Below, piece after piece: positions 9,901-28,498 of a stretch of DNA of 64,000 bases (positions within the stretch are counted from its first letter, which is position 1; each line of letters begins with the position of its first letter). The stretch covers positions 124,001 through 188,000 of IMG/VR virus record IMGVR_UViG_3300031963_000006; one strand, given 5' to 3'. Below the pieces are notes generated by a model. The model did no database searches. It saw nothing but the letters and a program-made list of their open reading frames with translations, and was not told the DNA's origin. Both the position numbers and the translations under genes were made by a program.

Positions 9901-10043
9901 ATAGTTTAGAAAATTTAGGATATAGTTATTATTTAACAAATAACGAGGAAGTGGTAGTATATAACTCTAATTGCTCGTTTAATGGACCTTTATCTAATAT
10001 AAAAATAAACGTTGGAATAAATTTTAATATAGTTTGTAGTTAA
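6969..10043 (+). CDS. Baseplate wedge-like protein
   Basis: LLKNLAQTLGW...AYLFKSKGTRKSIENLLRLIG resembles the KGT motif of P2 gpI / T4 gp7-type wedge proteins; C-terminal LVEQMVPATT. Confidence 0.6.
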   Translation: MAIKKFICPPTPASGSGTFSDDLVGFQLVQGGGLTQGNFQFTNAVTEKVDRTFYTGVFSDPINLENLGIVTVEQSKLIFENNFKVYPNFDLTQINNFVQYGSMSKRISTSVTKIISYFPAAIESHKMGLNYKTGATATNIVYDIVQEITTFNLDIARLRNPFDVDFTVNSTRNLSLKDIEVSSLRNLTVEFSKFSLYYEGEGYELSSIVPTNSLTSGILTVTVKGNPFSGESVVYNTLVIRPNDYEVNKVYNEDFDEVENFLLNRNQTPKYTCSFRSPKEADDGTFFITNVTATWPSNGVWNLDIYTANFDNYLVQLDEISQNFDSFKSNLISRFLTTGAFKDFDTIGQKMEKVLQIYGRSFDETNMFINALAFMNSVNYTVKNDIPSQLLKNLAQTLGWATNISPITNEDFLSSVFGQKNSGPSDFTGVAVKSTPDELNYQYYRNLVLNSAYLFKSKGTRKSIENLLRLIGAPDALVEFNEYVYVADQKINMSQFNTQYLQISGGTYINETAVLDPTNVFSIFGTTYTGYTTSLVIKDVNVLREEYPMDDEGYPTTPEDNENFYFQIGSGWFESTPQHRSPEQVDLTNSVFTGQNPNYQTSLTPFTYGQIYLNRFRNFPFMNLGYELTSIVDNNKSWTNDEVGQRVNIDGSFNARYVVEDDRLVLNVKNIDVFLNPGQALLYDVWYMSRQYNYPIPNQGLFYQRPTRCNPNPNIEYPYRGGVDWTEINPQPKRKSFFEFAQTFWHNTINVRNRQFQTDGKTGGYPTLQSIFWKYLNSNKTTDTSRYNGEPCSQVYSDIDNGIGVTNNNFNYQNMIEYVNGLGDYWIRLVEQMVPATTIWNTGVKYENSIFHRQKFVWRRQAGCNLVPARCNPCSTTASIFPYDCASFSTSCPIYPWQGQIQNFNGVLGNVLTSYLSSNGLFLTDCQLNTLITTWTIEILIDNQMQFYQEFFTGYGYSSVGSTPSEQGWLNILIDGLDSLENLGYSYYLTNNEEVVVYNSNCSFNGPLSNIKINVGINFNIVCS

Positions 10044-12904
10044 TGGCTTCATATTGTGGACTTTCATTTGAAATACAAGTTACTGGAGATTGTTCTAACA
10101 CAAGTTCGGGTTCTTTTAGCGTTGCAATAAACGGAAATGCTCCTGATTATACTATTCAGTTTATATCCCCGACCACTGATGTTTATTATTTAGGTAATAA
10201 TGTTACCGCAACAACCTTCACATCATTATCGGCGGGAACATATGTATTTGAGGTAATTGATTCTTGTTTGACCGCTGGAACTCCAAATATAGGGTCAGCC
10301 TACATTTCAAGCGGAACTACTGTTACCTGTATTGATATATCTAATACTTCATACGATACGAATAATGGCTCGATAACTGCCCAAACATCAAATTTCTATA
10401 ATGTTAGTAGTTTTTATTTATATGATTATTATAATGGATATATAACTTCAGGGAATTCATTTTTTGATTATTTTATATTTGATTCATTATCTGCGTCAAC
10501 ATATTACGTTATTGCTGACGACGGAGGAGGATGTACAGGTCAATCTGAAACTGTAATTATTAAAAGTTCAACTACATTTGATTACGGTTTTTATGTTATT
10601 AATGAATCAGGATGTAACATAAATAATGGTAAAATTTTTATAACAGGACTAACAGGCAACGGTCCATATACTTATCTATGGAATAATGGACAAACAACAT
10701 CATCAATTAGTGGGTTAAGTGCTGGTGGTTATACAGTTTCGGTTACCGATAAAGATTCAGTCGAATTAAAAAAAGGTACTACGGTAAACAAAGTGCCTAG
10801 GTTATCTTATGTTACTAATCTACAAACCGCGCCATCTTGCTATGGTAGTGACGGTCAACTTACATATATTATTAGTGGAGGAACTCCTCCATATAACTAC
10901 CAACTTTCTAATGGTATAACAAATGTAAGTTTTTTAACCAGTATAACAATACCTAATCTTTCCGCCGGAGATTATACTATGACGGTTACCGATGCTGGAA
11001 CATGCGTTGTGACGACTAATTTTTCACTTTTATCCCCTAAAGGGCTTAATGTTGTATCGGTAAACACCACAACCGCAACTTGTGATTTAAACAATGGAAC
11101 AGTTTCGATAAGATTAGTTGGTGGTTCACCACCTTATACGTATGTATTGACTAACCAAAATGGAAAAACTACAAACTACACTACTCAAAATCAATCACAA
11201 ATATTTTCTAATTTATATGAGGGTGAATATACTTTATCAATTAGTGACTTAGGCCCATGTACATTTGAAGAAACGGTTACAATTGGAAGTGTAAATAGTT
11301 TTCAAATTAATACTAATGTTTATGATATTACTTGTAGTAATGAATATGGTAGTGTTGGTATTGAAGTAGTTGGGGATGGTGTATCTCCGTATACTTATCA
11401 AATAACAGGAAAACCGTCAGTCACTAAAAATCAAAAAGAAATGGTTTTTGAGTATTTGGATGAGGGTTCCTATTTAGTACAAGTTATCGATTCATCAGGA
11501 TGTACACAAACTACTAATGTTTATGTCGGTAGCGGTAATAAAGTCAATTTTAATTATTTAACTAAAAAAACTAAAGATGGTGTTGACGGTAAAATTGATT
11601 TGTATATTACTCAAGGGACTCCTCCCTTTGAAATAGTTTGGAGTGATAATGTTGGAGGTCAAACCGGTAAAACTTTAACTAATTTGTCTGCAGGCACATA
11701 TGATGTCACGGTTACCGATGGTAATGGATGTGCCCAAACAAGAAGTCTTGATGTTGGAGGAACTAACTTAATTTCGTCATATCAAATTTACAATGTTTGT
11801 GACAGTGATTTATCCAATAGTGGTGAAGTTCTTAAGAAAGGACTCCAACAAATGTTATTAGAAGGTTTTTATGATTTAACATATGGTGATAATAATTGCG
11901 TACTTAATCAAGCTATTTTTACTGCCATAGTTAACTTAAGTGGGATAACATCAACCGCGCAATTCTATACTACTGAGTCATTAAATGATTTTCCATTTGA
12001 TAATGATTTTTATACAGTTGTCGAACAAATATTATTAACATATGATGGTATTGATAATGTTATTTTTAATTCTAATACAAATCAAGTAGTTATTAATACA
12101 GGATGTGGAGACCAAAATGTATCACTAATTGATTTTCCAATACAAGTTTCAGTACAGATAGATTATGATATAACGTGTGAAAGTTGTGATGGTGCTTCAG
12201 TATTACCATTCTTCCCATATGTTGTCATGGATTATGGAATCTATGGATTTGACCCTCAAAACAGAATTTTCTTAGAATTGCCCGAGAGCGATAAATATAC
12301 GTCTATTTTAGGTGCAACAAGAAGTCCTGATAATAGTAAATTATGGGTTTTAAATGACACTGGAAATAGTATTTTCGAATATGATGTAATATCCTTAATA
12401 CCTTATATAGTTACATTTAACAGAGAAATTAATTTAAGTTCAACAATTAGTCGAGCATTAACTTATGTGAATTCTACCACATTATATGGAGGTAATGATT
12501 CATCACAATACATCTCTTCAATTGACCTAATAAACGGAAATGTTGCCAATGGTATTTTCTTGAGTACGGTTCCATTTACGGTTGTTGATAATACTTTACT
12601 TATTAATTTATCAGGTAATACAATAGTATTGACACATGATATTGATGGATTCCAGTATATTAGACAGTATGATTCGGTAAGTAATCTTTTAGTTGAAATT
12701 AACCTTCCAGCAACTATAGGGTACACAATGTATGAATATGATTCGGTATTTTATTTAGTCGATTTGGGTAATTATCAAGTCTATTCTATTTTAACAACTT
12801 CACCATACACATTAACACCTGAATTTATAATAGAACCACCTGTAACTACTAACACATTTATCATGTCACAAATAAACACTTATGTAACAACTAATTTCAC
12901 ATAA
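10043..12904 (+). CDS. SprB-repeat adhesin-like virion protein with C-terminal propeller-like domain
   Basis: Tandem C..G....GG.PPY.Y...LSAG.Y.V.V.D..GC repeats (SprB-like); C-terminal ~230 aa resembles domains in the 18615 and 28498 ORFs. Confidence 0.7.
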   Translation: MASYCGLSFEIQVTGDCSNTSSGSFSVAINGNAPDYTIQFISPTTDVYYLGNNVTATTFTSLSAGTYVFEVIDSCLTAGTPNIGSAYISSGTTVTCIDISNTSYDTNNGSITAQTSNFYNVSSFYLYDYYNGYITSGNSFFDYFIFDSLSASTYYVIADDGGGCTGQSETVIIKSSTTFDYGFYVINESGCNINNGKIFITGLTGNGPYTYLWNNGQTTSSISGLSAGGYTVSVTDKDSVELKKGTTVNKVPRLSYVTNLQTAPSCYGSDGQLTYIISGGTPPYNYQLSNGITNVSFLTSITIPNLSAGDYTMTVTDAGTCVVTTNFSLLSPKGLNVVSVNTTTATCDLNNGTVSIRLVGGSPPYTYVLTNQNGKTTNYTTQNQSQIFSNLYEGEYTLSISDLGPCTFEETVTIGSVNSFQINTNVYDITCSNEYGSVGIEVVGDGVSPYTYQITGKPSVTKNQKEMVFEYLDEGSYLVQVIDSSGCTQTTNVYVGSGNKVNFNYLTKKTKDGVDGKIDLYITQGTPPFEIVWSDNVGGQTGKTLTNLSAGTYDVTVTDGNGCAQTRSLDVGGTNLISSYQIYNVCDSDLSNSGEVLKKGLQQMLLEGFYDLTYGDNNCVLNQAIFTAIVNLSGITSTAQFYTTESLNDFPFDNDFYTVVEQILLTYDGIDNVIFNSNTNQVVINTGCGDQNVSLIDFPIQVSVQIDYDITCESCDGASVLPFFPYVVMDYGIYGFDPQNRIFLELPESDKYTSILGATRSPDNSKLWVLNDTGNSIFEYDVISLIPYIVTFNREINLSSTISRALTYVNSTTLYGGNDSSQYISSIDLINGNVANGIFLSTVPFTVVDNTLLINLSGNTIVLTHDIDGFQYIRQYDSVSNLLVEINLPATIGYTMYEYDSVFYLVDLGNYQVYSILTTSPYTLTPEFIIEPPVTTNTFIMSQINTYVTTNFT

Positions 12905-12905
12905 A

Positions 12906-15527
12906 ATGACGGCTTTTTGTGGTCTATATATAACATCTGAATGTTTTGGTCAAATTCAAGCATCTCAAGACGGGATGTATAATGGTAGACCTCAGTATTT
13001 CTTTTCAATAACTTACAATGGTAATTTAATTAATGGTTGGATTTATTGGAGTCCTGATGATAATAGTTGGTTTGTCCAAGATTTATCTACCAATCAAAAT
13101 ATAAGTTATTTACCATTCGATAGGGTTCATCCAAACGGAACTTATTTGGAATGGGAAAATGTTTCACTATTAAGTTATGGTTGTTTAACTAATTCAACAT
13201 CATTTGAAACTGATTGGTTTTCAGAATGTCCACCAACTTATTTTGAATTTTGTTGCCCCAAAGAAAGTCAACCTGAAAATTTTATTGGATTACAAAGTTT
13301 TGAATACTATGGTTACATTGATAGTGTTTTTTATTTAGAATCACCACAATTTAGTGGATGTGCAACGGTAATTGAAGGGCCAATACCTAGTAGTTCAGTT
13401 ATTTATAACTCAGTTGATTTAACAACCCAATACGATAGATGTAATACTTGTACTGGAAGCACACAACCCTGTTATTCACAACCAATTTATACAACACCAA
13501 CACCGATAAGTCCATTAACCGCTGATACAGGATGTGGAGTTAATTATGTTTTAGTTAACGAATGTCAAGTTATAACTGTAAGTCCATTGTCGGTTTTATG
13601 TTCTGTAACTAATGTGTCAACATATGGTGGGAATGACGGTTCGATAGAATTATTAATAAGTGGAGGAACTCCTCCATATACGATAAGTTGGGATAACGGG
13701 TATTCAACTCCAATTATCAATAATTTAATCTCAGGTTCCTATAGATACACGGTTACAGATTATTATGGTGATTTTACTGTTTCAAATGCATGTTCAGTTG
13801 GACAATTACCAATGCCGACACCGGTCCCAAATCCATCTAATTTCTGTTTAACAGTTAATATTGATGGTCAGATATTTAAGATTCAATTTGAACCTTTTTT
13901 ACCATATACAGGTGGAATACCGGCTTACAAGGGATATGATGCAAATGGAGAATGGGTATATGATTTAGTTTTTTATACCGATTCTTTAAGATGGATGTTA
14001 GACGGTCCTATAACTGCCGGTGACTTAGTTAACTATGACCCTAGTTATCCACCATTAAATGGTTGGGAATGGTTAAATCCTGGTATCGGGATTGCAAATG
14101 GTGTTGTTGGAGATTGTCAAAACAACGGTAATTTTTGTATGACGATTAATGTAGATTCTTTCGCAACACAGCCATATAAAATTTATTTTAATGAATATGG
14201 GGAAGCAAATGGTAAACCAATGTGGATTGACAATTTAGACCAATACCAAATCTCATGGAGTGAGAACTCACAAAATTCATCTTGGATTTTACAGGGATTA
14301 CCTGAGTACGCAACATTTACTTTAATTAATTCTAACCCATCAATTCCCCCCACAAATCAGTGGTTTGTTAATGGTAAAAATGGAGAGGCGATAATTACAT
14401 ATGATAATTGTTTTAGTTCTACTATTTGTGCTACTATTTCTGATTTATGTGAAACTGAAAGTATTGAATTAGTGTCAGGTGAATTAATTAATGGACAACA
14501 AAGTTGGTCAGGACAATTACCTTGTGGTAATGTCGGAACATGGTCTATATATTATGATAATGTGAATAATCAATGGGTTACAGATGGGTTGGATTCAGTT
14601 GCAACTAATGACGCTATAAATTATAATAATGTTTATTTGGGACCATTTGGTTATTACAACACTAATGGATACTATAATCTTTTTGTTACCGATGGAAATT
14701 GTAATTCACAAGGTAATCTAAAAATGGTTGTTACATATAATGACCCAATTTCAGATAGTGACGGGGGTATAGTTTTAGAAGTCGAAGGAGGTAATCCCCC
14801 ATATCAATATTCCATAGATAACGGAACAACGTATCAAAATTTTCCAATTTTTTCAAATTTAAAATTTGGAACTTATGTCGTTACAGTTAAGGATGTTAAT
14901 GGTTTAATAATTAAACAAAGTATAATATTACAAAAACCACCACAGATAGTAACATATGAGGTTTCTTTGAACACTACATCTAGACGAACAGTAAATACCG
15001 TCACTACGACAACTGTGGAATATACAACAACATTAAAAGTCACACCGCCATTACCTAGCGGTGTTACAATAAACTTTAATCTAACTCACAATGATGTTTA
15101 TAAAGTATCTCCTTCAGAATCGGCGTCTTCGTTAACCCTCGGAACAATATTATTGAAAAATAATGAAGAAATTTCAATTGATGATACTATAACAGGTAAT
15201 TATACTTACTCTAACACACTTTTATCTTGTCAGTCAAATTTAGTTTATGTTACTGCAACAACTAATGATTGGTATAATTTATCAGTTACATATGGTGATA
15301 ATATTATTATAACCACAACGGTTACTAATGTTAAGAATGGTAAATACCCTTGTTATCTTGCCGAAAATAACGAATTATATTCTTTATCAAACTTAAGAAT
15401 TAATGGGTGTAGTAACTGTAAAACGTCAAATCAGGATTCTCCACCACCTATAAGTCAAACACCAACTAAAACCCCAACACCAACTCCTACACCATCTAAA
15501 CCAGCGACTACATCACCAGGTATATAA
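12906..15527 (+). CDS. Cys-rich modular virion/fibre protein with SprB-like repeats
   Basis: Four FC/IC...NG(R/K/Q)..(Y/W) Trp-rich modules, two GG.PPY SprB-like repeats, short PT linkers, PT-rich C-terminus. Confidence 0.6.
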   Translation: MTAFCGLYITSECFGQIQASQDGMYNGRPQYFFSITYNGNLINGWIYWSPDDNSWFVQDLSTNQNISYLPFDRVHPNGTYLEWENVSLLSYGCLTNSTSFETDWFSECPPTYFEFCCPKESQPENFIGLQSFEYYGYIDSVFYLESPQFSGCATVIEGPIPSSSVIYNSVDLTTQYDRCNTCTGSTQPCYSQPIYTTPTPISPLTADTGCGVNYVLVNECQVITVSPLSVLCSVTNVSTYGGNDGSIELLISGGTPPYTISWDNGYSTPIINNLISGSYRYTVTDYYGDFTVSNACSVGQLPMPTPVPNPSNFCLTVNIDGQIFKIQFEPFLPYTGGIPAYKGYDANGEWVYDLVFYTDSLRWMLDGPITAGDLVNYDPSYPPLNGWEWLNPGIGIANGVVGDCQNNGNFCMTINVDSFATQPYKIYFNEYGEANGKPMWIDNLDQYQISWSENSQNSSWILQGLPEYATFTLINSNPSIPPTNQWFVNGKNGEAIITYDNCFSSTICATISDLCETESIELVSGELINGQQSWSGQLPCGNVGTWSIYYDNVNNQWVTDGLDSVATNDAINYNNVYLGPFGYYNTNGYYNLFVTDGNCNSQGNLKMVVTYNDPISDSDGGIVLEVEGGNPPYQYSIDNGTTYQNFPIFSNLKFGTYVVTVKDVNGLIIKQSIILQKPPQIVTYEVSLNTTSRRTVNTVTTTTVEYTTTLKVTPPLPSGVTINFNLTHNDVYKVSPSESASSLTLGTILLKNNEEISIDDTITGNYTYSNTLLSCQSNLVYVTATTNDWYNLSVTYGDNIIITTTVTNVKNGKYPCYLAENNELYSLSNLRINGCSNCKTSNQDSPPPISQTPTKTPTPTPTPSKPATTSPGI

Positions 15528-17962: not shown

Positions 17963-18562
17963 ATGAAAAAATCTTTAAAGGAAAGTCCAAAAATTCTTGG
18001 ACTTGATGTATCTACGAGTACAATAGGATGGGCGTTATTTGATATTATGTCTAAAGAGTTATTAGAGTTAACTCATATATCCCCTAGACCAAAACCTAAA
18101 ACTGAGAATAAGATACATGAACTATTATCTAAGGCTGAAATATTCAGAACAAAGTTATTACAGTACAAAGATTTAGGTATTACTAATGTGGTAATCGAAG
18201 AGCCATTACTTAATTCGAATAATGTTTATACCATAGGTACATTATTGAGATTTAATACTCTGATTACTAAAGAAATATACGATGTTTTAGGAATAGTACC
18301 CGAATTTATTTCAACTTATAATTCAAGAAAAAATGCGTTTCCTGAGTTAGTTCAAAAAAACGACAAAGGTAAACATGTATTGTTTGGAGGATTACCTAAA
18401 GATATTGATAAAAAACAAATTATATGGGATTTGGTTGCTAAACGAGAACCTCAGATTCAATGGCAATATACTAAAAACAATACTCTTAAAAAAGAGAATT
18501 TTGACCAATCGGATGCTTATTGTTGTGTTCTTGGTTATATGAATCAAGAAAAAGTTTGGTAA
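17963..18562 (+). CDS. ruvC: RuvC-like Holliday junction resolvase
   Basis: ILGLDVSTSTIGW, VVIEEP and FDQSDAY give the RNase H-fold acidic tetrad. Confidence 0.75.
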   Translation: MKKSLKESPKILGLDVSTSTIGWALFDIMSKELLELTHISPRPKPKTENKIHELLSKAEIFRTKLLQYKDLGITNVVIEEPLLNSNNVYTIGTLLRFNTLITKEIYDVLGIVPEFISTYNSRKNAFPELVQKNDKGKHVLFGGLPKDIDKKQIIWDLVAKREPQIQWQYTKNNTLKKENFDQSDAYCCVLGYMNQEKVW

Positions 18563-18586: not shown

Positions 18587-18616
18587 AACCACGTATTAAG
18601 TACGTGGTTTTTTTTT
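18587..18616 (+). terminator. Intrinsic terminator between convergent genes
   Basis: AACCACGTA-TTAAG-TACGTGGTT followed by a T run. Confidence 0.75.
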
Positions 18617-21600
18617 ATGGTGTTACGGACCAATTTCTACCGGCACTTGTTAAAGTTGTTTTACATGCTATTCCAGCGGGTGATGGACTTGAGTTTGGAT
18701 TAGCGGTACCAACAGCATTAGATAATGTTAATGTACCATTTGTTAAACTGGTGCTATTTGCCAAGTTACATAAAATAAAATCAACACTACTTTGATTCAA
18801 AGCGCAGTTTCCGGCAATAACTCTCTTTAAAGAAGTTGCACTTGCAAAAGAAATTGACCAATTTACAATAGGATTTATCGACATAGTTAATGCAGTTAAT
18901 GATGTTGGGAAAGTATTTCCTAATGGTAAAATGTTATATTGGTTATTTATTTGATTTGATGAAATATTTAAATCCGCAACTTGTATTGATGAACTAAAAT
19001 TAGTTATCGTTGTTATAAAATTATTACTTAAATTTAATGTGAAGTTAGATGCGGTGGACAAATAGCTCATATTAAACGTGGTTAAATTATTATTAGTTAA
19101 AGAAACTAATTTAACATTAGATGGAAAGTTTTGAGTCCACGATGATAAAGAAACACCGTTTAATAAAAATGTTTGTAGATTAGGGCTAGTCGTTAAAGTT
19201 TGAGTCCAAGTGGGGATAGTGTTTATGCCTCCTCCGACACTTCCAGTAACTGTGTTAGCGTTAAAATAAATTAAACTGGTTGGTAATGTCACAGGTAGAG
19301 AAGTTAAAGCGTTAGCTTCTAAATTTAAAGTTTGTATTGAATTCGGTAGAGGTGGTATAGTAGTTAATACGTTATAAGATAAATTTAAAGTTATTAATGA
19401 AGTACAAGATATTATTGTGTTAGTAAAAGTGTTTATTCTATTATTATTTAAATCAAGTGTTTGGAGTAAAGTATTTGAGGTTAAGTTTATTGTGAATGAT
19501 GATAAACCAAATAGTAATGGGTTACCTGTATCTCTATTTTGAACCATACTAATGGTCTTAACACTAGCGGGGAAGTTATAAGTCCATCCGGTTAATCTGT
19601 TTCTATCAAAATTCACATTCTCTAAGGTTGTACAACTTAATAAACCATTTGGAGCATCAAAAAACTTTAAATTATTTTGACCTGAAGAGTTATAAACCTG
19701 AAAATCTCTAAGACCTGGAGGAGGTATTAATGTGAAATTAACTAATTGAGTGTCCGCAAATAAAACGAAAAGTATATTAACACTAGTCCAAGATGATAAA
19801 TTATGACTAAAGTCTGTAAAATTACTATTCCAAATTTGGAAATTATTAATTCTAATTCTACTAGATAAATTAAATGAATTTAACTCTAAATTTGGATTGT
19901 TGTGGTTAAAAAATCCTATTCTTGTGAATACACTATTTACAACATCAATACCTGATAAATTAGAGAAAGTACAAAATTCAAATCTTAAATTAGATATTGA
20001 TGACCAACTATCAAATGTGCCTGGGTTATCTATTACTTTTGATATTCTTCTAAAAGTTATTGCACCAATTGTTCCTGATGTTTGAAAAATTCCGTTTAAT
20101 TGATAATCGGCAAATGTTGCGGTATATAACGCCGAATTATAAGTTTTACTTGTTGTGTGAGTGGTAGTATTTGGTAAATTAACACCAAAAGTTTGACCAT
20201 CACCCAAATCAACATAAAACTTTTTAGTTCCACTTCCAAAATCTTGTCTAACCTCCATTGGATTTGAACCGACCACATTTTGAACTTGCCAAAATGGGCT
20301 TGAACCTGTGAAACTTCTACCAATACATTGTGGTGATTGTGAGGCTCCTTTAACTCCGGTTACACCTATATTAAAAGTTGTTGTTGCTGTATATGGTGGG
20401 TCTGAATTTACATTGAAAACATCACCAGTACTTTGGTCGATAAAGTAAAATTCATTATTTATTTGATAAATAGCATTTGCGTCTGTAATATTTGGTGTTG
20501 GAGGGTTTGGGCAATTTGTGCATCCTATCTGTATCTCAGGGAAGTCTCTTAAATTAGTTATATAGTCATGTTGAGTAATATAGAAGAATGTAGGAGTACC
20601 TGGATTTGTTTGGGTAAATATAACTTTATTATTTGTGGTCAATAAAATATCACCAGTAACTGTATTTGGGGTGAGTAAACTTCCTGGTAAATTAAACATC
20701 GACACAAAACTTGAAGTATTATTAGGGAATGGGTTTAGAGTGATTTTAATAATTCTATTTGGATTAACCAAAGTTTCACTACCAATTAAAGTATTTGAAT
20801 TAACCGCAACTAAACCTTTGCCTAAGAATGAAATACCAGGAGGGAAACTTATATCCCTGAAAGAACCAACCGTAAATGGCGTTAATGAAGTTATTATCCA
20901 TTCTCTAATAAAAATATTACCAGAACCAGGGCCACCATATAGCCAAAGTTTACCTGTTTGAGAACCTGGGTCCCAGTAATGGGCAATATCCTCGGAATTG
21001 AAAAATCCTGGTATTATTATTTCAGATAGTGTATTACCAATTGGGTTAAAGTAATATATTTTTGTTGAGGTGTTGACCAAAATAAAACAATCATCTAAAA
21101 TAACTGGTGGTTGATATGGGTTAGTTGGAGTTGGGGTTGGAGTCGACGTATTTGTAGGGGTTTGAGTTTTAGTAGGGGTTTGACTTTGAGTTGGTGTTTG
21201 AGTTTGAGTTTTAGTAGGGGTTTGACTCTTAGTTGGAGTTGATGTTTGGGTCGGTGTTTGAGTTGATGTTTTTGTTGATGTTTGGGTTGATGTTTGGGTT
21301 TGGGTCGGTGTTTGTGTTGATGTATTTGTTGGAGTTTTAGTTTGCGTAGGGGTTTGAGTCTGTGTTGGAGTTGGGGTCGGAGTTGGAGTAGATACGGCAA
21401 AAACTTCAGTGACACAAGAATAAACACTTGCGGCGTCTGGTGGATTATACTGTAAAGGATTTGTGTAATATGTATTTACATCTCCTAAATAAGATATATT
21501 TAAAGGATTTGAAGCTTCAACTTGTACGATTCTACCTGTATAAGAAATTACATAATAAAATCCGTTCTCGTAGAATAAACCTTCGGCAGTTTCCATTATA

Positions 21601-23519
21601 GGATTAACACCCGATATTGGGAAAAAAGAAGTTATATCGACTAATGTTTCAATAACTCCTGTATAATAATCATACTGAACTAAAACTCTTTTTTGTTCCT
21701 CAATTGGTTCCATAGTACTGCAACCTAAAACGGCAATGAATTTTCTTGGAGTAGTGTCTGTTACTATAAAGTCATAAACAAAAATTCCTCTATTAGGGTT
21801 ACAAGGATTATCTGAAGTACCATATGGATTATTATTATTTCCAAAACCGGCGGTATAACTAAATCTTAATACCGCGGAAGAAGTGGCGTCCCCTAAATTA
21901 GGAATTGAACTTGGAGTTATCTCAAATACTTGATTTGGGAAAAACGCATTGTTGCCAACAAGAACTAACCTACTTAAACCTCCTTCATCAAAAGATGCGA
22001 ACCCTCTTTGGTGACCTATAGAACCATAATAAAATCTCTTACTAAATGTTGCAACAAATGGACAACGAGTATAATTAATTTCATTTATTATTATTCTAGC
22101 TGGTAAAACATCCAAAACTCTTTGTATTACCCATATTTTATTACTAGACATTGCAATATCAAATGCTGGGTAACCAAATTCATATGAGTTATCAGGTATT
22201 GGTAATTCTATTGTGGTTAACGAAGGTGCGTCAACGGCTATTATCCTAATAAAATAATTAGGGTCAGGTTGGAATGTTGAATTCCAAATACCTGTTCTAT
22301 AGATAGAAATACAATCACCAAGACAAAATGCCGTTGGAGTAGGTGTTTGAGTTTGTGTTGGAGTTTGAGTTCTAGTTTGTGTCCGTGTAGGAGTTTGGGT
22401 GTTAGTAGGGGTTTGACTCTTAGTTGGAGTTGATGTTTGGGTCGGTGTTTGAGTTGGTGTTTTAGTTTGAGTTGATGTTTGTGTTGGTGTTTGTGTTTGG
22501 GTAGGGGTTGGGGTAGGAGTTGGTGTTGAACATACAATAGAGTTACTCAACAGACAGGTAGGACAATCTGTTTGTAGAGTAATTGTATCGGTTATACCGT
22601 AATTATAATTGTTTAATGCTGTACTAATTGATGTTGTAAATGTTGCACAACCAGTATAACTTGAATTGGTTATGTAATAAACGTTGTTATTTACCAAACC
22701 TGTAAATATTATATTTGGTAAATTAAATATTTGAAAAGAATTATTTGGAGGGCAACAATCTAAGAAAAATGCGTTCTCAGGCGGATAACTAGTAGGTGTG
22801 GGTGTTGGTGTTTTAGTTTGAGTTGGTGTTTTAGTTTGAGTCGATGTTTGTGTAGGTGTTTGAGTTGATGTTTGAGTTGATGTTTGTGTAGGTGTTTGTG
22901 TAGGTGTTTGTGTTGATGTATTTGTGGGAGTATTAGTTTTAGTTGGTGTTGATGTTTGGGTTGATGTTTGGGTCGGTGTATTAGTTGGTGTACTGGTTTT
23001 AGTTGGAGTTTGAGTTTGAGTTGGAGTAGGTGAATTATTAGGAGTTGGGGTTGGAGTTGATGTTTGTGTTTGTGTTGGGGTTTTAGTTTGAGTATTAGTT
23101 GGAGTTGATGTTTGTGTTTGGGTTTTAGTTTGGGTGTTAGTAGGTGTCTGTGTTTGTGTTGGGGTTTTAGTTTGAGTTTGTGTTTGAGTATTGGTTGGAG
23201 TTTGTGTTTTAGTTTGAGTATTAGTAGGGGTCTGTGTTTGTGTTTGTGTTGATGTTTTTGTGGGTGTTTGTGTTTTTGTTGGAGTGGGTGTTTGTGTTTT
23301 TGTTGGAGTGGGAGTTGGAGTCGGGGGAAGTAGAGTAAAGTTACAACCTAAACCATAACCTTCAAAATAAACTTCATATGTACCATAGATATAATCCGCA
23401 GTATAGTAATACGGTATTAACTGAGGTCCAATATTTACAGTGCCACCTGTATAAGGATAAAATATAATATCACCTATTTGACCATTAAAATTATTGGAAC
23501 TTATTAAAACTGTTGGCAT
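18615..23519 (-). CDS. 1634-aa modular protein: Thr/Pro/Gln linkers, Cys module, two propeller-like domains, PKD-like segment, C-terminal leucine-rich repeats
   Basis: Three TPTQT linkers; LQTLDLNNNRI, LITLNLSYNVLTTIPPLPNSIQTLNLEANAL are LRRs; FYVDLGDG PKD-like. Confidence 0.75.
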   Translation of the reverse strand: MPTVLISSNNFNGQIGDIIFYPYTGGTVNIGPQLIPYYYTADYIYGTYEVYFEGYGLGCNFTLLPPTPTPTPTKTQTPTPTKTQTPTKTSTQTQTQTPTNTQTKTQTPTNTQTQTQTKTPTQTQTPTNTQTKTQTQTSTPTNTQTKTPTQTQTSTPTPTPNNSPTPTQTQTPTKTSTPTNTPTQTSTQTSTPTKTNTPTNTSTQTPTQTPTQTSTQTSTQTPTQTSTQTKTPTQTKTPTPTPTSYPPENAFFLDCCPPNNSFQIFNLPNIIFTGLVNNNVYYITNSSYTGCATFTTSISTALNNYNYGITDTITLQTDCPTCLLSNSIVCSTPTPTPTPTQTQTPTQTSTQTKTPTQTPTQTSTPTKSQTPTNTQTPTRTQTRTQTPTQTQTPTPTAFCLGDCISIYRTGIWNSTFQPDPNYFIRIIAVDAPSLTTIELPIPDNSYEFGYPAFDIAMSSNKIWVIQRVLDVLPARIIINEINYTRCPFVATFSKRFYYGSIGHQRGFASFDEGGLSRLVLVGNNAFFPNQVFEITPSSIPNLGDATSSAVLRFSYTAGFGNNNNPYGTSDNPCNPNRGIFVYDFIVTDTTPRKFIAVLGCSTMEPIEEQKRVLVQYDYYTGVIETLVDITSFFPISGVNPIMETAEGLFYENGFYYVISYTGRIVQVEASNPLNISYLGDVNTYYTNPLQYNPPDAASVYSCVTEVFAVSTPTPTPTPTQTQTPTQTKTPTNTSTQTPTQTQTSTQTSTKTSTQTPTQTSTPTKSQTPTKTQTQTPTQSQTPTKTQTPTNTSTPTPTPTNPYQPPVILDDCFILVNTSTKIYYFNPIGNTLSEIIIPGFFNSEDIAHYWDPGSQTGKLWLYGGPGSGNIFIREWIITSLTPFTVGSFRDISFPPGISFLGKGLVAVNSNTLIGSETLVNPNRIIKITLNPFPNNTSSFVSMFNLPGSLLTPNTVTGDILLTTNNKVIFTQTNPGTPTFFYITQHDYITNLRDFPEIQIGCTNCPNPPTPNITDANAIYQINNEFYFIDQSTGDVFNVNSDPPYTATTTFNIGVTGVKGASQSPQCIGRSFTGSSPFWQVQNVVGSNPMEVRQDFGSGTKKFYVDLGDGQTFGVNLPNTTTHTTSKTYNSALYTATFADYQLNGIFQTSGTIGAITFRRISKVIDNPGTFDSWSSISNLRFEFCTFSNLSGIDVVNSVFTRIGFFNHNNPNLELNSFNLSSRIRINNFQIWNSNFTDFSHNLSSWTSVNILFVLFADTQLVNFTLIPPPGLRDFQVYNSSGQNNLKFFDAPNGLLSCTTLENVNFDRNRLTGWTYNFPASVKTISMVQNRDTGNPLLFGLSSFTINLTSNTLLQTLDLNNNRINTFTNTIISCTSLITLNLSYNVLTTIPPLPNSIQTLNLEANALTSLPVTLPTSLIYFNANTVTGSVGGGINTIPTWTQTLTTSPNLQTFLLNGVSLSSWTQNFPSNVKLVSLTNNNLTTFNMSYLSTASNFTLNLSNNFITTITNFSSSIQVADLNISSNQINNQYNILPLGNTFPTSLTALTMSINPIVNWSISFASATSLKRVIAGNCALNQSSVDFILCNLANSTSLTNGTLTLSNAVGTANPNSSPSPAGIACKTTLTSAGRNWSVTP
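21211..21265. repeat. 55-bp exact direct repeat, copy 1
   Basis: ttagtaggggtttgactcttagttggagttgatgtttgggtcggtgtttgagttg, identical to 22402-22456. Confidence 0.9.
22402..22456. repeat. 55-bp exact direct repeat, copy 2
   Basis: Identical to 21211-21265; offset 1191 bp = 397 codons. Confidence 0.9.
22790..23330 (-). repeat. Low-complexity coding repeat ([12 protein letters not shown] linker)
   Basis: Degenerate 6-nt-period repeats encoding alternating Thr; boundaries approximate. Confidence 0.85.
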
Positions 23520-23552: not shown

Positions 23553-24821
23553 CTAATTACACTGATTTGATGTTATTGTAAGTCCCATTTGATAATAAGT
23601 TTGACCACTGCAATTCACCATATATGAATTAGTTGTACCTGTAACCGTTACAAATTGTATTGTTGTTGGGTCAACTAAATTTTTTAATGAACCGTCCCAA
23701 GCTTGAATACCTAATTCACTAGCCACATGGTCAATTCTACAGGCAAAACCAAAATTTCCTCCACCCGCAAAATTTAAACCAACAATTTTCCAAATTCCAC
23801 TAAAGTCGGCGATAAGAGCTGAACCTGAATCACCTCCAGCTATTGGGTTTAGACATAAAGATGATAAACTTGGGTCGTTTTCGGGTCTAACAAATGCTAT
23901 TAAATCTGAAAAATAAGCCGTGACAATATTACCTTGCATTTTATACCCACTAATTGGTTGAGTGGTGCCCAAAGAATAAACTCTTAAAGGACACGTTGGA
24001 GCTTGTTTTACGCCGGTTGTTCTTCCACTACTATATAGTATTGGATTTGTACTTAATAATAAATCAATTTCTGCGGTACTGGCAAATGGGATTGGAGTTG
24101 TGTTTCCTGTTAGTCCGTATTGTTTATAAGATTCGGTTAAACTTAAAATTGGAGTCCCACTTAATGATATTAGAGCACCATCTACTTTATTATTTGTTGT
24201 GAACCCCAAGTAAATTGGTACGTATCTTACTACTTGACCTATAATGTTTTGAGGAGGGCCCAAAGGACTTTCACCGGGTTGGTACGCTAAATCTACTTCT
24301 AATGAGCCGTTATCGTTTAAATTATATTCATTAAAAATAACTCCACCCAAATTTCTTTGTGTTGTGTAAAAAGCATCTTTTATTACCACATGATTATTTG
24401 TAACCCCCACTAAACTCTGTGTTGCAATATCTACGGCAACAAATCCCAAAGTACCAACAAACCCTAATTTACTTTTAGACGTTAAAGAAATGCCACCCTG
24501 AACTGGCCTGATATATAATCTATTAGGAGGAGGATTAGTTATCCAAAGATTACATTGAGGATTACAAGCTAATACCTCAATTTCACCAACTTCAACAACA
24601 TCCATAAAGTAAGTTTTATTATCGATAGTAATTGGTTCATTTGGTAAAATTTCCTCAGGAAATAAATTAGATAATTTTTTTTTCTCAGGTACAAAAAATA
24701 TTATGGATTCTTTTCTAGTATCAATACCATTTGATATTTTGAATCCATAACCAACACCTACATTATTTGGGGTTTTTAGGTTAAACTCCTCTATAATTTT
24801 TTTTAAATTTTCTGTTAACAT
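23553..24821 (-). CDS. Trypsin-like serine protease with Nal1-type N-terminal domain
   Basis: Intact triad TNNHV / VDGAL / GGDSGS; N-terminal VGVGYGFK...IIFFVPEKK...DVVEVG pattern as in Nal1-like proteases. Confidence 0.8.
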   Translation of the reverse strand: MLTENLKKIIEEFNLKTPNNVGVGYGFKISNGIDTRKESIIFFVPEKKKLSNLFPEEILPNEPITIDNKTYFMDVVEVGEIEVLACNPQCNLWITNPPPNRLYIRPVQGGISLTSKSKLGFVGTLGFVAVDIATQSLVGVTNNHVVIKDAFYTTQRNLGGVIFNEYNLNDNGSLEVDLAYQPGESPLGPPQNIIGQVVRYVPIYLGFTTNNKVDGALISLSGTPILSLTESYKQYGLTGNTTPIPFASTAEIDLLLSTNPILYSSGRTTGVKQAPTCPLRVYSLGTTQPISGYKMQGNIVTAYFSDLIAFVRPENDPSLSSLCLNPIAGGDSGSALIADFSGIWKIVGLNFAGGGNFGFACRIDHVASELGIQAWDGSLKNLVDPTTIQFVTVTGTTNSYMVNCSGQTYYQMGLTITSNQCN

Positions 24822-24826
24822 TTTTT

Positions 24827-27800
24827 CTAAAAAGGTTTTGAATTAAATTTAGTAAATATTGTGTTTATATTAGTTGGTATATTAGTAGGTGTTAAAGTTG
24901 GGGTAATTGTTGGAGTTGGTGAAGGAGGGTTTATGTTTACACAGTATAACCTAAAATTGTAATCTGCGGTTGATGTGTAACCGGACCCCAAAATTGTTGA
25001 TATTACTTTTACATATACTTCGGATGGGGAAGAAATGTTCTTCATAAAAGTTGAAAATCCTGTAGAACCTCCGGCAATTGGAGAACCATTTAAGTATTCT
25101 ACCCATGGACCATATAATAGAGCGTTATCAGACCTAAAACCAGTATCTATAACTATTTGGTTATTCCAATATACTATAAACCTATCAGGGTATGTATTAG
25201 CGCTAAATTCAAAGTAAACTTGACCTATTTGAGAGCCTAAATTGTATTTAAATAGGTTACTTCCCATGTTATTTGTAGGTGAAATTAGATTTCCGCAGTT
25301 AACCAAATAATCTTGATAACAATTTATTTTGGTCACGGCGTTTAACAATGGAACATTTACACCATTATTATAGTAGTATAAGTTTGACCACGAACTAATA
25401 GAAACCCCTATAGAATTCGGGGAGTTTGTATATGTTCCGGCCGATGAGAAGGCTGAAGTATATATATTACCATCACAACCTAAATATTGTAAATAAACCC
25501 TACCATTCCAAACAGGTACTGAATTTCCAACTGCATTGTCTAACATTTGTTGTGTTATGGTTACTTGCCAATTAAAACAACCATTATTACAATTATTTGG
25601 TGTTAAAGTTGGAGTTGGTGTAACAGGTATCGGGTTAAAACTAGAACAAACAATTTCCATCGTAGAACCCCCAAGAGGGCTACCGTCTGAATAATTAAAT
25701 GTTAAACTAGTATAAGGGTTTGGTGAGGAAATTTTATATTCACCACCACCAGTACCAGGTTCTGGTAATGTTGCAATAGTGTTACCTGAAATTTCTTGAT
25801 AACACCATGGACCAACTAAAGTTATTGTAACCGGACCTGAATCACTCGTCACTACAAAAGTTTCTCTACTTGACCAACCAATAAAGTCAGACATAGTTAT
25901 TCTGAAAACTAAATTATTCATTGGTTCACTAAAATTCAGTGTGTATAATGTTGGAGTACATTCAATTGGACCACCTGGAGGGTTCTCTCTACAACCTATC
26001 CATACAGTATCTGAGTTTTCGTATACACAACTAGTGTGAGTCCATAATTGTTCCGCATAACCACTACCAGTGGCTGTTATTAATATCCCGTAATAATTTA
26101 CATAACCACCAATAACAGGTAATTTACCTACACAACCAACTGGGGTTTGTGTTGGTGTTGGAGTTGGGGCGATATTATAACAATAGTTTTGACGTGTAAA
26201 GGCAGAATTTACATAAATTGTAAAATTATTTTGAGTATAATAAACTTGCGGAGTTCCACCTAAAGGGACACCTGATAAATTAGGATAATTATTATAAACT
26301 CCTGAACTAGTATAATTTTGAATTTTTTGTAATCCATCACATCCTACCCATCTTACATAAATAAGTCCATTAATAATTGGATTAGTATTACCAGATGCAC
26401 TTAAAATATATTCCTCTAATATATTTACCGTCCAAGCAAAACAATTTTGACAATTATCTCCATTAGTAGGCGTTATTGTTGGTGTTAATGTTGGTGTTGG
26501 TGTTAGAGTTGTATCTATAATCTCAACAACTAAAATATCACATTCAGGGTCCGGAGTCGGAGTCGGGGTTGGCGTAGGAGTTTCGGTTGGGGGAGGGCTC
26601 TTTTCTGGTGTTAATGAAGGTGTTTGTGTTTGTGTTGGTGTTTGTGTTTGTGTTGGTGTTTGGGTTGATGTAGGAGTTTGACTTTTTGTAGGAGTTTGAC
26701 TGTTTGTTGGAGTTTGAGTCTGGGTATTTGTAGGTGTGTTAGTTGATGTTTTTGTTGGTGTTTGTGTTTTAGTTTGAGTTGGAGTGTTGGTTGGAGTCTG
26801 ACTCTGAGTTGGGGTATTTGTCGGAGTTTGAGTTTGTGTGTTGGTTGGTGTCGGAGTTGGAGTTTCTGATACTTCAGGTGTTCGTGTAGGAGTTTTAGTT
26901 TGGGTTTGAGTTTGGGTTTGAGTTGGAGTATTGGTTGGTGTTTGTGTTGATGTTGGTGTTTGTGTTTGGGTATTAGTTGGTGTTTGAGTTGATGTTTTTG
27001 TTGGTGTCTTAGTTGGTGTTTGAGTCTTAGTTGGAGTTTGTGTTTGAGTAGATGTTTTTGTTTGAGTTGGGGTGGATGTTTTAGTCGGAGTATTACTCAG
27101 AGTTGGATTTGGAGTTGGTGTTTGCGTAGGTGTTTCAGTCGGTGTTTGAGTTGACGTAGGAGTTTGAGTTTTTGTTGGTGTAGGGGTTTTTGTTGATGTT
27201 TTTGTTGGGGTTGGAGTTGGTGTTTCTGTGGATGTATTAGTTGGCGTATTTGTTGGAGTTTTAGTTGATGTTCTTGTTGGTGTTGGGCTATCAGTTGGTT
27301 GTGGTGTTGGGGTTGGAGTACTTGTTGATGTTGGAGTTTCAGTTTTAGTTGGAGTTGGAGTTTTAGTATTAGTTGGAGTTTTTGTTGAAGTTTTTGTAGG
27401 GGTTACTGTTGGCGTCGAAGTTTTAGTTGGAGTTTTAGTTTGAGTTGGACTTATTGTGTTTGTTGGGGTATTAGTTTGAGTCGGAGTCTGAGTTTTAGTT
27501 GGAGTTTTAGTTTGAGTTCTGGTTTGAGTTTGTGTTTTAGTTTGTGTTGGGGTTTGAGTTACGTCAGGAGTCGGAGTTTGTGTTTGAGTCGATGTTTTAG
27601 TTGGAGTTTTGGTGGGTGTTTGTGTTCTAGTTTCAGTTCGTGTTTGTGTTTGTGTTATTGTATTTGTGGGAGTATTTGTTGGGGTTTGAGTTGTTGTTGG
27701 GGTTTGAGTATTAGTTCTTGTTGGAGTTCTTGTTGGAGTTTTTGTAACACAAAATGTTTGAGTTGGAGTTGGTGTTGGTAAATCGTTATTGGTAGGTGTT

Positions 27801-28498
27801 TGAGTTTTAGTTGTGGTAACAGTTGGAGTTACGGTATTTTGAGGAGTTTTTGTTTGAGTTCTAGTCTTTGTAGGTGTTTGAGTCCTTGTTGTTGTATTTG
27901 TAGGAGTTTTCGTTGGAGTTGGAGTTTTTGTAGGAGTTTTTGTTTGAGTCTGAGTTTTTGTTGGAGTTTTTGTTTGAGTTTGAGTTATGGTCGGAGTTTG
28001 TGTTACGGCTCCTGGAGCTCCTCCTGGACAACAATAAGATGTTGTTGAACATTCTGCATTAGGCAATAAAAATTCCGTAAAATTTGTAGGGTAATCCTCG
28101 GTACTAAAAGAAATATCCTGAACTAAACCACAAAAAGTGTATTCAACTAAATTAATAGGGTCCAAACAATTTGATAAACATATTGTAATACGCCATAAAT
28201 CAAAAGGTTGTGTGTTGGTACCTAAGGTGACATATCTATTAATACCAGCACAACAATCGTATACCTCGAAAACGTCTTGAGGGATAAATGATTTAAAATT
28301 TTGACAATCGGAAGCAACTAATTTTACCCCTACTTCAGGAGAATTTTCATAAGGGTAGGGTACTGTGATATCTATTGGTTTTGATGTGTAAGTAATAACT
28401 CTTGAAACAAATACACAATTTTCACCATTTGGTTCACAAACATAAATGTCATAAGGTGCCGTTAAACCTGATATGTCTGTTATTTTAACTGTTGCCAT
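24827..28498 (-). CDS. 1223-aa mucin-like modular protein (about 500-aa Thr/Pro/Gln stalk, duplicated Cys domain)
   Basis: N-terminal PYDIYVC module, long TPT stalk, two C..CF.W.V.I...NG..Y....GCDG repeats. Confidence 0.75.
26470..28010 (-). repeat. About 1.5-kb low-complexity coding repeat (Thr-X dipeptides)
   Basis: Extreme G+T skew on + strand; encodes ([10 protein letters not shown])n; boundaries approximate. Confidence 0.9.

What the first reader, a model, noticed from the sequence alone, without database searches (positions are those of the whole stretch)
21211..22456. Exact 55-bp direct repeat flanks one whole domain in frame: linker-mediated domain loss or duplication
Seen: 21211-21265 and 22402-22456 are identical, including synonymous positions, while the rest of the linker DNA is degenerate. 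They are 1191 bp (397 codons) apart and bracket the first propeller-like domain of the 1634-aa protein. Inference: this is either the scar of a recent domain insertion or duplication, or a substrate for recombination that deletes or duplicates the domain in frame, giving host-range variants.
Basis: partly seen in the sequence, partly recalled or inferred. Interest (0 to 1): 0.6.

Follow-up and report, generated by a model that had tools for sequence, protein, structure and literature searches.

The report
Young linker repeat brackets swappable domain
Two identical 55-base stretches sit in the flexible linkers on either side of one propeller domain of a giant, adhesin-like protein of an uncultured 321-kb phage; they are real and young, were most likely copied from one linker into the other, and lie where relatives of this phage carry a different domain.

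Summary
Window 21211-21265 and 22402-22456 are identical and 1191 nt (397 codons) apart. They lie in linkers L3 and L2 of a 1634-aa minus-strand gene (18615-23519) and bracket domain X (aa 397-709, propeller-like model). This is the longest non-terminal exact repeat in the 321-kb phage genome. Other linker matches reach at most 35 nt; 900 shuffles reached at most 37.

It is probably not a scar of a recent insertion. An orthologue with saturated synonymous divergence has the same c-L-X-L-P2 order without the repeat. The 55-mer is the core of a ~110-nt, 94%-identical tract. The best reading is recent linker-to-linker gene conversion or template switching.

The recombination-substrate idea gains indirect support:
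- A population variant of the neighbouring linker gene has a clean 72-nt in-frame deletion ending exactly at that gene's 28-nt direct repeat.
- Other orthologues carry a different domain (Y) in X's slot, or carry X on the neighbouring gene.
- One contig end carries the duplication/circle junction across the 55-mer, which may be an artefact.

No X-deleted form was seen.

The parts
18615..23519 (-). Gene for the 1634-aa modular protein P0001: N anchor / L1 / c / L2 / X / L3 / P2 / LRR end
   Evidence: ORF and translation. The DNA is identical on all eight other complete copies fetched, apart from one SNP in the sample 3300057123 copy (L070/L074). The exact protein is on record on 23 contigs, including an NCBI assembly.
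21211..21265 (-). 55-nt exact repeat, copy in linker L3 (aa 752-770), downstream of X in coding sense
22402..22456 (-). 55-nt exact repeat, copy in linker L2 (aa 355-373), upstream of X in coding sense
21200..21305 (-). Extended near-identical tract in L3; pairs with 22391-22502 (100/106 identical, one 6-nt gap)
   Evidence: Local alignment score 64, against 44 or less for other linker pairs in the genome, contig-end tandem excepted. Coordinates.
22391..22502 (-). Extended near-identical tract in L2
21393..22331 (-). Domain X (aa 397-709): orphan beta-propeller-like domain, single copy
   Evidence: No Pfam family. Only 4 relatives among 1.84 billion representatives. AF2 model pLDDT 64.5, pTM 0.70. 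Foldseek top hits are Kelch propellers with TM 0.39-0.46. Single copy in the genome.
21117..21392 (-). Linker L3 (aa 710-801), Thr-X dipeptide repeats
22332..22529 (-). Linker L2 (aa 331-396)
22530..22787 (-). Small Cys-rich domain c (aa 245-330). Present in L033 and L065/L075, absent in L015.
22788..23327 (-). Linker L1 (aa 65-244)
23328..23519 (-). Conserved N-terminal domain (aa 1-64), putative anchor
   Evidence: 62-95% identity across all orthologues, while the C-terminal part is 44-61%
20220..21116 (-). Domain P2 (aa 802-1100): second propeller-like domain, distant homologue of X
   Evidence: AF2 pLDDT 75.5, pTM 0.76. Kelch/YWTD propeller matches. hhalign X vs P2 95.9%.
18615..20219 (-). 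C-terminal leucine-rich-repeat region (aa 1101-1634), the most variable part
   Evidence: Pfam LRR_4 29.5 bits against a cut-off of 27. Only 56% identical between L015 and L065, which are otherwise near-identical.
24827..28498 (-). Neighbouring linker gene g1223 (P0004), length-polymorphic in the population (1223, 1199, 1160 aa)
27419..27446 (-). 28-nt exact direct repeat, copy 2. Together with 27491-27518 it delimits the 72-nt in-frame deletion seen in contig Ga0568996_0000437.
27491..27518 (-). 28-nt exact direct repeat, copy 1
17963..18562 (+). RuvC-like Holliday-junction resolvase gene, convergent with and next to the 3' end of the gene
   Evidence: phrog_159 E = 8.8e-7. Protein identical in the L075 lineage at 91% DNA identity.

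Best explanation
The window comes from an uncultured 321-kb phage. The gene encodes a 1634-aa modular, adhesin-like protein. It has a conserved 64-aa N-terminal domain, followed by globular cassettes strung on Thr-Pro/Thr-Gln linkers: small Cys-rich c, propeller X, propeller P2 and a leucine-rich-repeat end. The 55-nt repeat is the perfect core of a ~110-nt tract shared by the two linkers on either side of X. The most likely origin is a recent non-reciprocal copy from one linker into the other, by ectopic gene conversion or replication template switching. Such events are made possible by the 6-nt periodic linker code and by the phage's own recombination genes. The tract did not arrive with X, which has occupied this slot since before the allele lineages diverged. 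As a consequence there is now a direct repeat of 55 perfect nt (about 110 nt at 94%) spaced by exactly 397 codons. This is the best substrate in the genome for homologous or slipped-strand recombination. Such an event would delete X in frame (1237 aa) or duplicate it (2031 aa). Over evolutionary time the same linkers border the cassettes that differ between relatives. Shown: the repeat and its statistical singularity; the old age of the architecture; cassette variation among orthologues; a repeat-bounded in-frame deletion in the neighbouring gene. Inferred: conversion as the origin; that X is actually lost or doubled; any effect on adsorption or host range.
For: The repeat is real and far beyond chance. 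A ~110-nt tract is 100/106 identical with a 55-nt core and is the top-scoring linker pair in the genome. Elsewhere in the same two linkers an identical 18-aa peptide uses different codons in 12 of 18 positions, so peptide selection does not explain the DNA identity. The same c-L-X-L-P2 order occurs in L033, with four-fold-site identity 42-53% in four of five domains and no repeat across X. Linker DNA turns over fast: between L015 and L065 the domains are 95-97% identical but the linkers 57-68%. L065 and L075 are 99.4% identical yet differ by 68 aa of tandem linker expansion. A perfect 55-mer must therefore be young. X is single-copy. X and P2 are only remote homologues. Repeat-mediated in-frame deletion is seen in the same phage population: a 72-nt deletion with end points ambiguous over exactly the 28-nt repeat and no other difference. 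Cassette variation in the slot: L065/L075 have N-L-c-L-Y-L-P2; L015 has N-L-Y-L-P2 with X at the C-end of the upstream gene; the distant P0012-14 have other cassettes. Recombination genes are present: a RuvC-like resolvase next door, an SbcC-like nuclease and an exonuclease. A duplication/circle-type junction sits at one contig end.
Against: No X-deleted or X-duplicated full-length form was found. The eight other complete copies fetched, and the contig from the metagenome scan, keep the parental arrangement; one further contig (L076) ends in a junction of non-parental order. The exact 1634-aa protein is on record on 23 contigs. Most of these assemblies are one clone, since G000 equals G002 with 0 mismatches in 126,766 nt, so they say little about minority variants. 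The direction and mechanism of the copy cannot be read from the sequence. The tract has 6 mismatches and an indel, so it may be one older event or two events. With 6 mismatches placed at random in 106 nt, a perfect run of 55 or more has probability of roughly 0.09 by my estimate, so 'very recent' applies to the tract relative to linker turnover, not in absolute terms. The 28-nt case spans only 72 nt, whereas 1191 nt is a much longer interval for slippage. There is no evidence that the protein is in the virion.
Confidence: 0.6

Rival explanations
1. Scar of a recent cassette integration. A circular or linear X cassette carrying linker sequence recombined into a pre-existing c-to-P2 linker by a single crossover, duplicating the homologous 55-110 nt on both sides of X.
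For: Direct repeats flank exactly one cassette. X is mobile on evolutionary scales, lying at the C-end of the upstream gene in L015 and of P0006. The window X groups with the L015 X rather than with the L033 X, with modest support of 83/85. The contig end L076 carries what would be the circle junction.
Against: L033 has X in the same slot with largely saturated synonymous divergence and no repeat, so an independent second insertion at the same place would be needed. X is single-copy, so there is no donor in the genome. No empty-site allele was found.
Confidence: 0.12
2. Assembly artefact. A de Bruijn assembler homogenised two similar linker stretches. 55 is one of metaSPAdes's k values.
For: The length equals a common k-mer size. 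The contigs appear to share one pipeline: the 127-nt end overlap in G002 points to a final k of 127. One older assembly breaks and mis-joins exactly at the repeat.
Against: The sequence is identical in every complete copy fetched from several samples and years, apart from one SNP elsewhere in the gene in one sample. The copies include an NCBI-deposited assembly. A final k of 127 exceeds the whole tract, so each copy with its flanks must exist in reads. Assemblers do not invent k-mers.
Confidence: 0.03
3. The stretch is kept identical by selection on a functional element, either a peptide epitope or glycosylation motif or an RNA/DNA signal present twice.
For: The two linkers also share an identical 18-aa start, so some peptide-level constraint on linkers exists.
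Against: That shared peptide uses different codons, unlike the 55-mer. There is no equivalent in L033, L015 or L065, where the best match is 44/55 or less. There is no Rfam family. The mRNA strand is essentially unstructured: -1.9 kcal/mol, z = -1.65.
Confidence: 0.05
4. Chance coincidence in low-complexity, codon-biased DNA.
For: Linker DNA is periodic and built from few codons. Matches of 20-29 nt are common.
Against: None of 900 shuffles reached 55, and the longest was 37. P is about 2e-6 even given the same peptide. It is unique in 321 kb.
Confidence: 0.005

Closest known systems
T-even phage distal tail-fibre/adhesin locus (gp37/gp38), where recombination between conserved motifs swaps specificity segments (Trojet et al. 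2011, PMC3157838, citing Tetart et al. 1998)
   Same: It has a conserved N-terminal attachment part and a variable distal part. Variable segments are delimited by recurring junction motifs. Relatives carry different segments in the same slot (for the paper; here).
   Different: Here the junctions are long, fast-evolving Thr-Pro/Thr-Gln linkers that are only about 65-70% alike, rather than short conserved motifs. The exchanged units are whole ~300-aa globular domains. No virion role or host-range effect is shown. There is no sequence relation to gp37/gp38.
Pro-Thr linkers of modular bacterial glycoside hydrolases (for example Cellulomonas fimi CenA/Cex), long discussed as joints for domain shuffling (my own knowledge, not checked here)
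   Same: Low-complexity Pro/Thr linkers join independently folding modules whose order differs between related proteins.
   Different: The setting is a phage genome, the linkers are far longer (66-180 aa) and Gln/Lys-rich, and the modules are propellers, LRRs and orphan domains rather than catalytic and binding modules.
Deletion and duplication between short direct repeats by slipped mispairing or homologous recombination. T4 needs roughly 50 bp for efficient recombination (my own knowledge).
   Same: The 28-nt repeat in g1223 has given a clean deletion that keeps one repeat copy. The 55-mer has the same geometry.
   Different: For the 55-mer itself the product has not been observed, and the interval is 1191 nt instead of 72 nt.
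Diversity-generating retroelements (template and variable repeat pairs of ~100 nt in phage receptor-binding genes)
   Same: Two ~110-nt near-identical direct repeats sit in a putative adhesin gene of a phage.
   Different: The six mismatches are not adenine-specific on either strand. No reverse transcriptase is found in the complete genome. The repeats lie in linkers, not in a ligand-binding fold.
Kelch-like propeller proteins of large phages and giant viruses
   Same: The X and P2 models match six-bladed Kelch/YWTD propellers. BFVD hits include proteins annotated as structural in phages CBB, Phabio and 7-7-1.
   Different: TM-scores are only 0.3-0.65, no Kelch Pfam family is detected, and the best viral matches are uncharacterised proteins of Virus NIOZ-UU157.

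Membership tests
Repeat-mediated in-frame deletion/duplication substrate | Exact direct repeat long enough for recombination, with both copies in the same codon phase | tested here: met
   55/55 identical at an offset of 1191 = 3 x 397. About 110 nt at 94% identity.
Repeat-mediated in-frame deletion/duplication substrate | Recombinant product observed with one repeat copy at the junction | tested here: inconclusive
   No deletion of X in any assembly. One contig end (L076) carries the duplication/circle junction, 67/68 + 55 + L2 flank, but it may be a mis-join or a chimera. The equivalent product is seen for the 28-nt repeat of the neighbouring gene.
Modular phage receptor-binding / tail-fibre protein | Conserved N-terminal anchor with a variable distal part | tested here: met
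   N domain 62-95% identical against 44-61% for the LRR end.
Modular phage receptor-binding / tail-fibre protein | Part of the virion, or encoded in a recognisable structural module | tested here: inconclusive
   The neighbouring large genes have no PHROG or Pfam function, apart from SprB-repeat hits on record for the 873- and 953-aa neighbours. The flanking genes are a resolvase and a primase. There are no proteomic data.
Modular phage receptor-binding / tail-fibre protein | Determines adsorption or host range | not testable with these tools
   The phage is uncultured and the host unknown. There are no relatives in cultured phages or in prokaryote genomes.
Junction-motif-mediated module exchange (T-even type) | Orthologues carry different modules in the same slot between recurring junction sequences | tested here: met
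   X (window, L033) versus Y (L065, L075) between c and P2. Domain c is present or absent with linkers kept on both sides in L065 versus L015.
Junction-motif-mediated module exchange (T-even type) | Crossover points mapped inside the junction motifs | tested here: inconclusive
   Linkers between alleles are too diverged (57-68%) to place breakpoints. One breakpoint (P2/LRR in L015 versus L065) and the 3' edge of the X loss in L065 lie outside any linker.
Diversity-generating retroelement | Reverse transcriptase gene plus adenine-specific TR/VR mismatches | tested here: not met
   No RVT_1 match in the complete genome, with positive controls ringing. The mismatches are A/C, C/T, A/C, C/T, C/A and C/T.
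Beta-propeller (Kelch-like) fold for X | Six four-stranded blades around an axis; family HMM match | tested here: inconclusive
   The model is of moderate confidence (pLDDT 64.5, pTM 0.70). Foldseek probability is 1.0 but TM is 0.39-0.46. There is no Pfam hit. The homologous P2 gives a better model (pLDDT 75.5).
Leucine-rich repeat protein | Pfam LRR family above its gathering score | tested here: met
   LRR_4 scores 29.5 bits against a cut-off of 27 when aa 1100-1634 are scanned alone. It scores 24.4 bits, below the cut-off, on the whole protein.

The most novel reading that the evidence does not exclude
The 55-nt repeat pair is an active domain-number switch. In natural populations of this phage the X propeller would be excised (possibly as a 1191-nt circle), lost or doubled at appreciable frequency by recombination between the two linkers, giving a standing mixture of adhesin architectures. 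The duplication/circle junction at the end of contig Ga0114841_1000090 would be its first trace. More generally, low-complexity Thr-Pro/Gln linkers would act in this phage lineage as the recombination joints of an exon-shuffling-like system that moves whole domains between about 11 linker-bearing genes.
Probability: 0.15. Interest if true: 0.7.

Novelty: new variant of a known kind. Interest (0 to 1): 0.45.

Why it matters
Phage host-recognition proteins are known to evolve by swapping modules, but the joints are usually inferred from conserved motifs. This uncultured 321-kb phage lineage strings orphan globular domains on long, fast-evolving Thr-rich linkers in about 11 genes. Comparison of four allele lineages shows whole domains (X, Y, c) present, absent or on the neighbouring gene, always next to such linkers. 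One natural variant shows a linker repeat producing a clean in-frame deletion. The 55-nt repeat marks the one place in the genome where loss or doubling of a whole domain should be happening now. It is therefore a concrete locus at which to measure, from reads or in culture, how often domain-level rearrangements arise in a phage adhesin-like gene. The repeat by itself is a modest finding, and the functional claims about host range remain untested.

Tried and rejected
- **Read-level test.** It did not say the stretch was human-like.
- **Collection scans with the 55-mer.** Viral and metagenome scans returned only the parental two-copy arrangement.
- **Diversity-generating retroelement.** Rejected: no reverse transcriptase and the mismatches are not adenine-specific.
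- **Transposon target-site duplication.** Rejected: 55 nt is far too long, X holds no transposase-like sequence, and it is single-copy.
- **RNA element.** No Rfam match, no stable fold, no tRNA in the window.
- **Recent X/P2 duplication.** BLASTP finds nothing. Only profile comparison detects remote homology.
- **Recent sharing of N and c between the window and L033.** Their high protein identity (95% and 91%) goes with four-fold-site identities of 17/24 (71%) for N and 12/26 (46%) for c. For c this points to purifying selection rather than recent exchange. For N, with only 24 sites, recent exchange is not excluded. With four taxa, most apparent discordance between domains cannot be separated from rate differences.
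- **Breakpoints of c or X gain and loss between L015 and L065.** The linkers are too diverged to map them. The 3' edge of the X loss shows no repeat.
- **L069 gaps and the L072 189-nt deletion in g1223.** Neither is repeat-flanked. L069 is probably a misassembly.
- **Virus typing.** No Terminase_6C or NCLDV capsid match. No relatives among cultured phages or in prokaryote genomes. The ESM Atlas gave nothing for the 801-aa neighbour. A RecA-family match is below the cut-off at 22.2 bits.
- **Literature.** The search found no description of Thr-Pro linker cassettes in large phages.
Full report
**1. The observation**

Window 21211-21265 and 22402-22456 are identical over 55 nt. The match stops on both sides, and the offset is 1191 nt. 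Both copies lie in one minus-strand ORF, 18615-23519, of 1634 aa (P0001).

Its layout is:
- N, aa 1-64
- linker L1, aa 65-244
- small Cys-rich domain c, aa 245-330
- linker L2, aa 331-396
- domain X, aa 397-709
- linker L3, aa 710-801
- domain P2, aa 802-1100
- a leucine-rich-repeat end, to aa 1634

The repeat copies encode aa 355-373 (in L2) and aa 752-770 (in L3), so they bracket X.

**2. More than chance**

- Among 2199 nt of linker DNA in this gene and its neighbour, the next exact match is 29 nt.
- Three nulls of 300 runs each reached at most 35, 37 and 25 nt. The nulls were the same peptides with codons redrawn, a 6-nt unit shuffle and a codon shuffle.
- Given the same 17-aa peptide, identical codons have P of about 2.4e-6.
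- In the 126.8-kb record and in the complete genome, the 55-mer is the longest exact repeat apart from the contig-end overlap. The genome is 321,403 nt, with 11 linker-bearing ORFs and about 5.5 kb of linker DNA. Other linker repeats are tandem and at most 35 nt.
- The best other ungapped match to the 55-mer, in the genome or in relatives, is 44/55.
- The first 18 residues of L2 and L3 are the same peptide, yet 12 of the 18 codons differ. This serves as an internal control.
- The 55-mer is the perfect core of a longer tract (21200-21305 and 22391-22502). The tract is 100/106 identical with one 6-nt gap and is the best-scoring linker pair in the genome.
- All long linker matches are in phase, so 'in frame' follows from the periodic code.

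**3. Whether it is an artefact**

- The 4905-nt gene is letter-identical on the eight other complete copies I fetched, apart from one SNP in the sample 3300057123 copy (L070/L074). The copies come from JGI samples of different years and from an NCBI assembly.
- The exact protein is on record on 23 contigs.
- The end overlap of the complete contig is 127 nt, which points to a final assembly k of 127. That is longer than the whole tract.
- These contigs are essentially one clone: 0 mismatches in 126,766 nt. They confirm the sequence but say little about minority forms.

**4. The organism and the protein**

- The record is an IMG/VR virus contig. Its complete counterpart is 321 kb with 32.7% G+C.
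- Phage-type replication and recombination genes are present: a DnaG-type primase, an exonuclease and an SbcC-like nuclease. A RuvC-like resolvase lies directly beside the gene.
- Nothing similar exists among cultured phages or prokaryote genomes.
- X has no Pfam family. It has only four relatives among 1.84 billion representatives.
- The X model (pLDDT 64.5, pTM 0.70) resembles six-bladed Kelch propellers at TM 0.39-0.46.
- P2 gives a better propeller model with pLDDT 75.5.
- X and P2 are remote homologues by profile comparison: 95.9% probability, 24% identity. BLASTP sees nothing between them.
- The LRR end passes Pfam's cut-off when scanned alone.
- The pattern is a conserved N-terminus (62-95% identity) with a variable end (44-61%). 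This is the pattern of phage attachment proteins. A virion role is inferred, not shown.

**5. Relatives**

Four allele lineages were recovered.

| Lineage | Layout |
|---|---|
| L033, 1660 aa | N-L-c-L-X-L-P2/LRR, as in the window |
| L065/L075, 1492 and 1560 aa | N-L-c-L-Y-L-P2/LRR, where Y is an unrelated domain |
| L015, 1424 aa | N-L-Y-L-P2/LRR, without c; X (64% identical) is at the C-end of the upstream gene |

- In L065 the upstream gene stops just where X would begin.
- More distant orthologues (P0012-14) keep N and a P2-like end, with other cassettes between them.
- A Y homologue and a P2 paralogue sit in other linker genes of the window's own genome.
- The slot bracketed by the repeat is therefore variable among relatives, and X has changed genes.
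- A tree of X places the window copy with the L015 copy rather than with L033, with modest support of 83/85.

**6. Age**

- Between lineages, four-fold sites are about 36-53% identical, which is saturated. The N domain is an exception, at 65-71% in two of the pairs on about 24 sites.
- L033 shares the architecture but has no long-range repeat across X. Its long matches are tandem, with offsets of 24 nt.
- Linkers evolve much faster than domains: 57-68% against 95-97% between L015 and L065.
- Linkers also change length within a 99.4%-identical lineage.
- The architecture is therefore old and the tract young. That favours a recent copy between L2 and L3, by gene conversion or template switching, over a scar left by the arrival of X.

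**7. Whether such repeats recombine here**

- Looking up the neighbouring genes exposed population variants.
- Contig Ga0568996_0000437 carries the neighbouring linker gene with a single 72-nt in-frame deletion and no other change.
- The end points of that deletion are ambiguous over exactly the 28-nt direct repeat at window 27419-27446 and 27491-27518. That repeat is the longest in that gene.
- Only 28 nt are shared at that offset, not 72. The long form is therefore ancestral and the short one a repeat-mediated deletion.
- A second variant has a 189-nt in-frame linker deletion without flanking homology. A third looks misassembled.

**8. A lead**

- In sample 3300008259 the assembly breaks in this gene.
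- Contig Ga0114841_1000090 begins, in coding sense, with 68 nt of the L3 upstream flank (67/68). It continues with the 55-mer, then the L2 downstream flank, then X, L3, the 55-mer again and the rest of the gene.
- That is the junction expected from a tandem duplication of the 1191-nt unit or from an excised circle.
- It could equally be a library chimera or an assembler mis-join at a contig end. Only reads can decide.

**9. Verdict**

- The 'recent insertion or duplication scar' reading is disfavoured.
- The 'substrate for in-frame loss or duplication' reading is plausible and indirectly supported, but unproven for X.
- 'Host-range variants' is speculation.
- The closest known analogue is module exchange at junction motifs in T-even tail-fibre and adhesin genes (PMC3157838). 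Here the joints are long low-complexity linkers and the units exchanged are whole domains.

Noticed in passing
L040:1-259 and L055/L056 (G002:321145-321403): The 'direct terminal repeat' (259 nt) behind the 100%-complete call for the 321-kb contig lies inside linker-coding DNA of an ORF that runs off the contig end. It contains a 127-nt exact repeat at 132-nt spacing. It therefore looks like an assembler overlap within a tandem linker repeat, and the copy number there is uncertain.
   Followed up: partly
L055:11564-11609 and L055:15618-15663 (G002:311564 and 315618): A 46-nt exact AT-rich repeat lies just upstream of two linker-bearing ORFs (starts at 311613 and 315683). It may be a shared promoter or leader. 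It is the second-longest non-terminal repeat in the genome.
   Followed up: no
window 24827-28498 (P0004), aa ~680-760 and ~985-1060: The neighbouring 1223-aa linker protein holds two copies of a Cys-containing domain ([11 protein letters not shown]... and [10 protein letters not shown]...). Its C-terminal domain is related (32%) to the middle domain of the L015/L065 upstream gene.
   Followed up: partly
window 23553-24821: A 422-aa protease-like gene (phrog_20754, with a GDSGS motif) sits between the two linker genes only in the window lineage. L015 and L065 lack it, and L033 has a different upstream gene with a metalloprotease motif, linkers and a glycosidase-like end.
   Followed up: partly
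L015:4303-8577 vs L065:7159-11637: Two phages that are 93% identical in flanking genes, and 85-97% in N, Y and P2, are only 48-70% identical over the last ~560 codons (the LRR end). The breakpoint is not in a linker, so the distal end is replaced independently.
   Followed up: partly
L033:7410-7988: An HNH-endonuclease-like 192-aa ORF is inserted between the RuvC-like gene and the 800-aa gene in L033 only.
   Followed up: no
window 10043-15527: The 953- and 873-aa neighbours carry Pfam SprB-repeat hits in the precomputed table. SprB is a Bacteroidota gliding adhesin, which is a weak hint to the host group and to a surface-binding role for this gene block.
   Followed up: no
window 17963-18562 vs L075:6501-7100: The RuvC-like 199-aa protein is 100% identical between lineages whose DNA is only 91% identical there and about 79% in the adjacent gene. 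This indicates very strong purifying selection.
   Followed up: partly
L075 vs L065 (gene 1560 vs 1492 aa): Genomes from different samples and assemblers that are 99.4% identical differ by 68 aa of tandem linker units in L1 and L2. This is either real slippage or assembler collapse or expansion of tandem repeats.
   Followed up: partly
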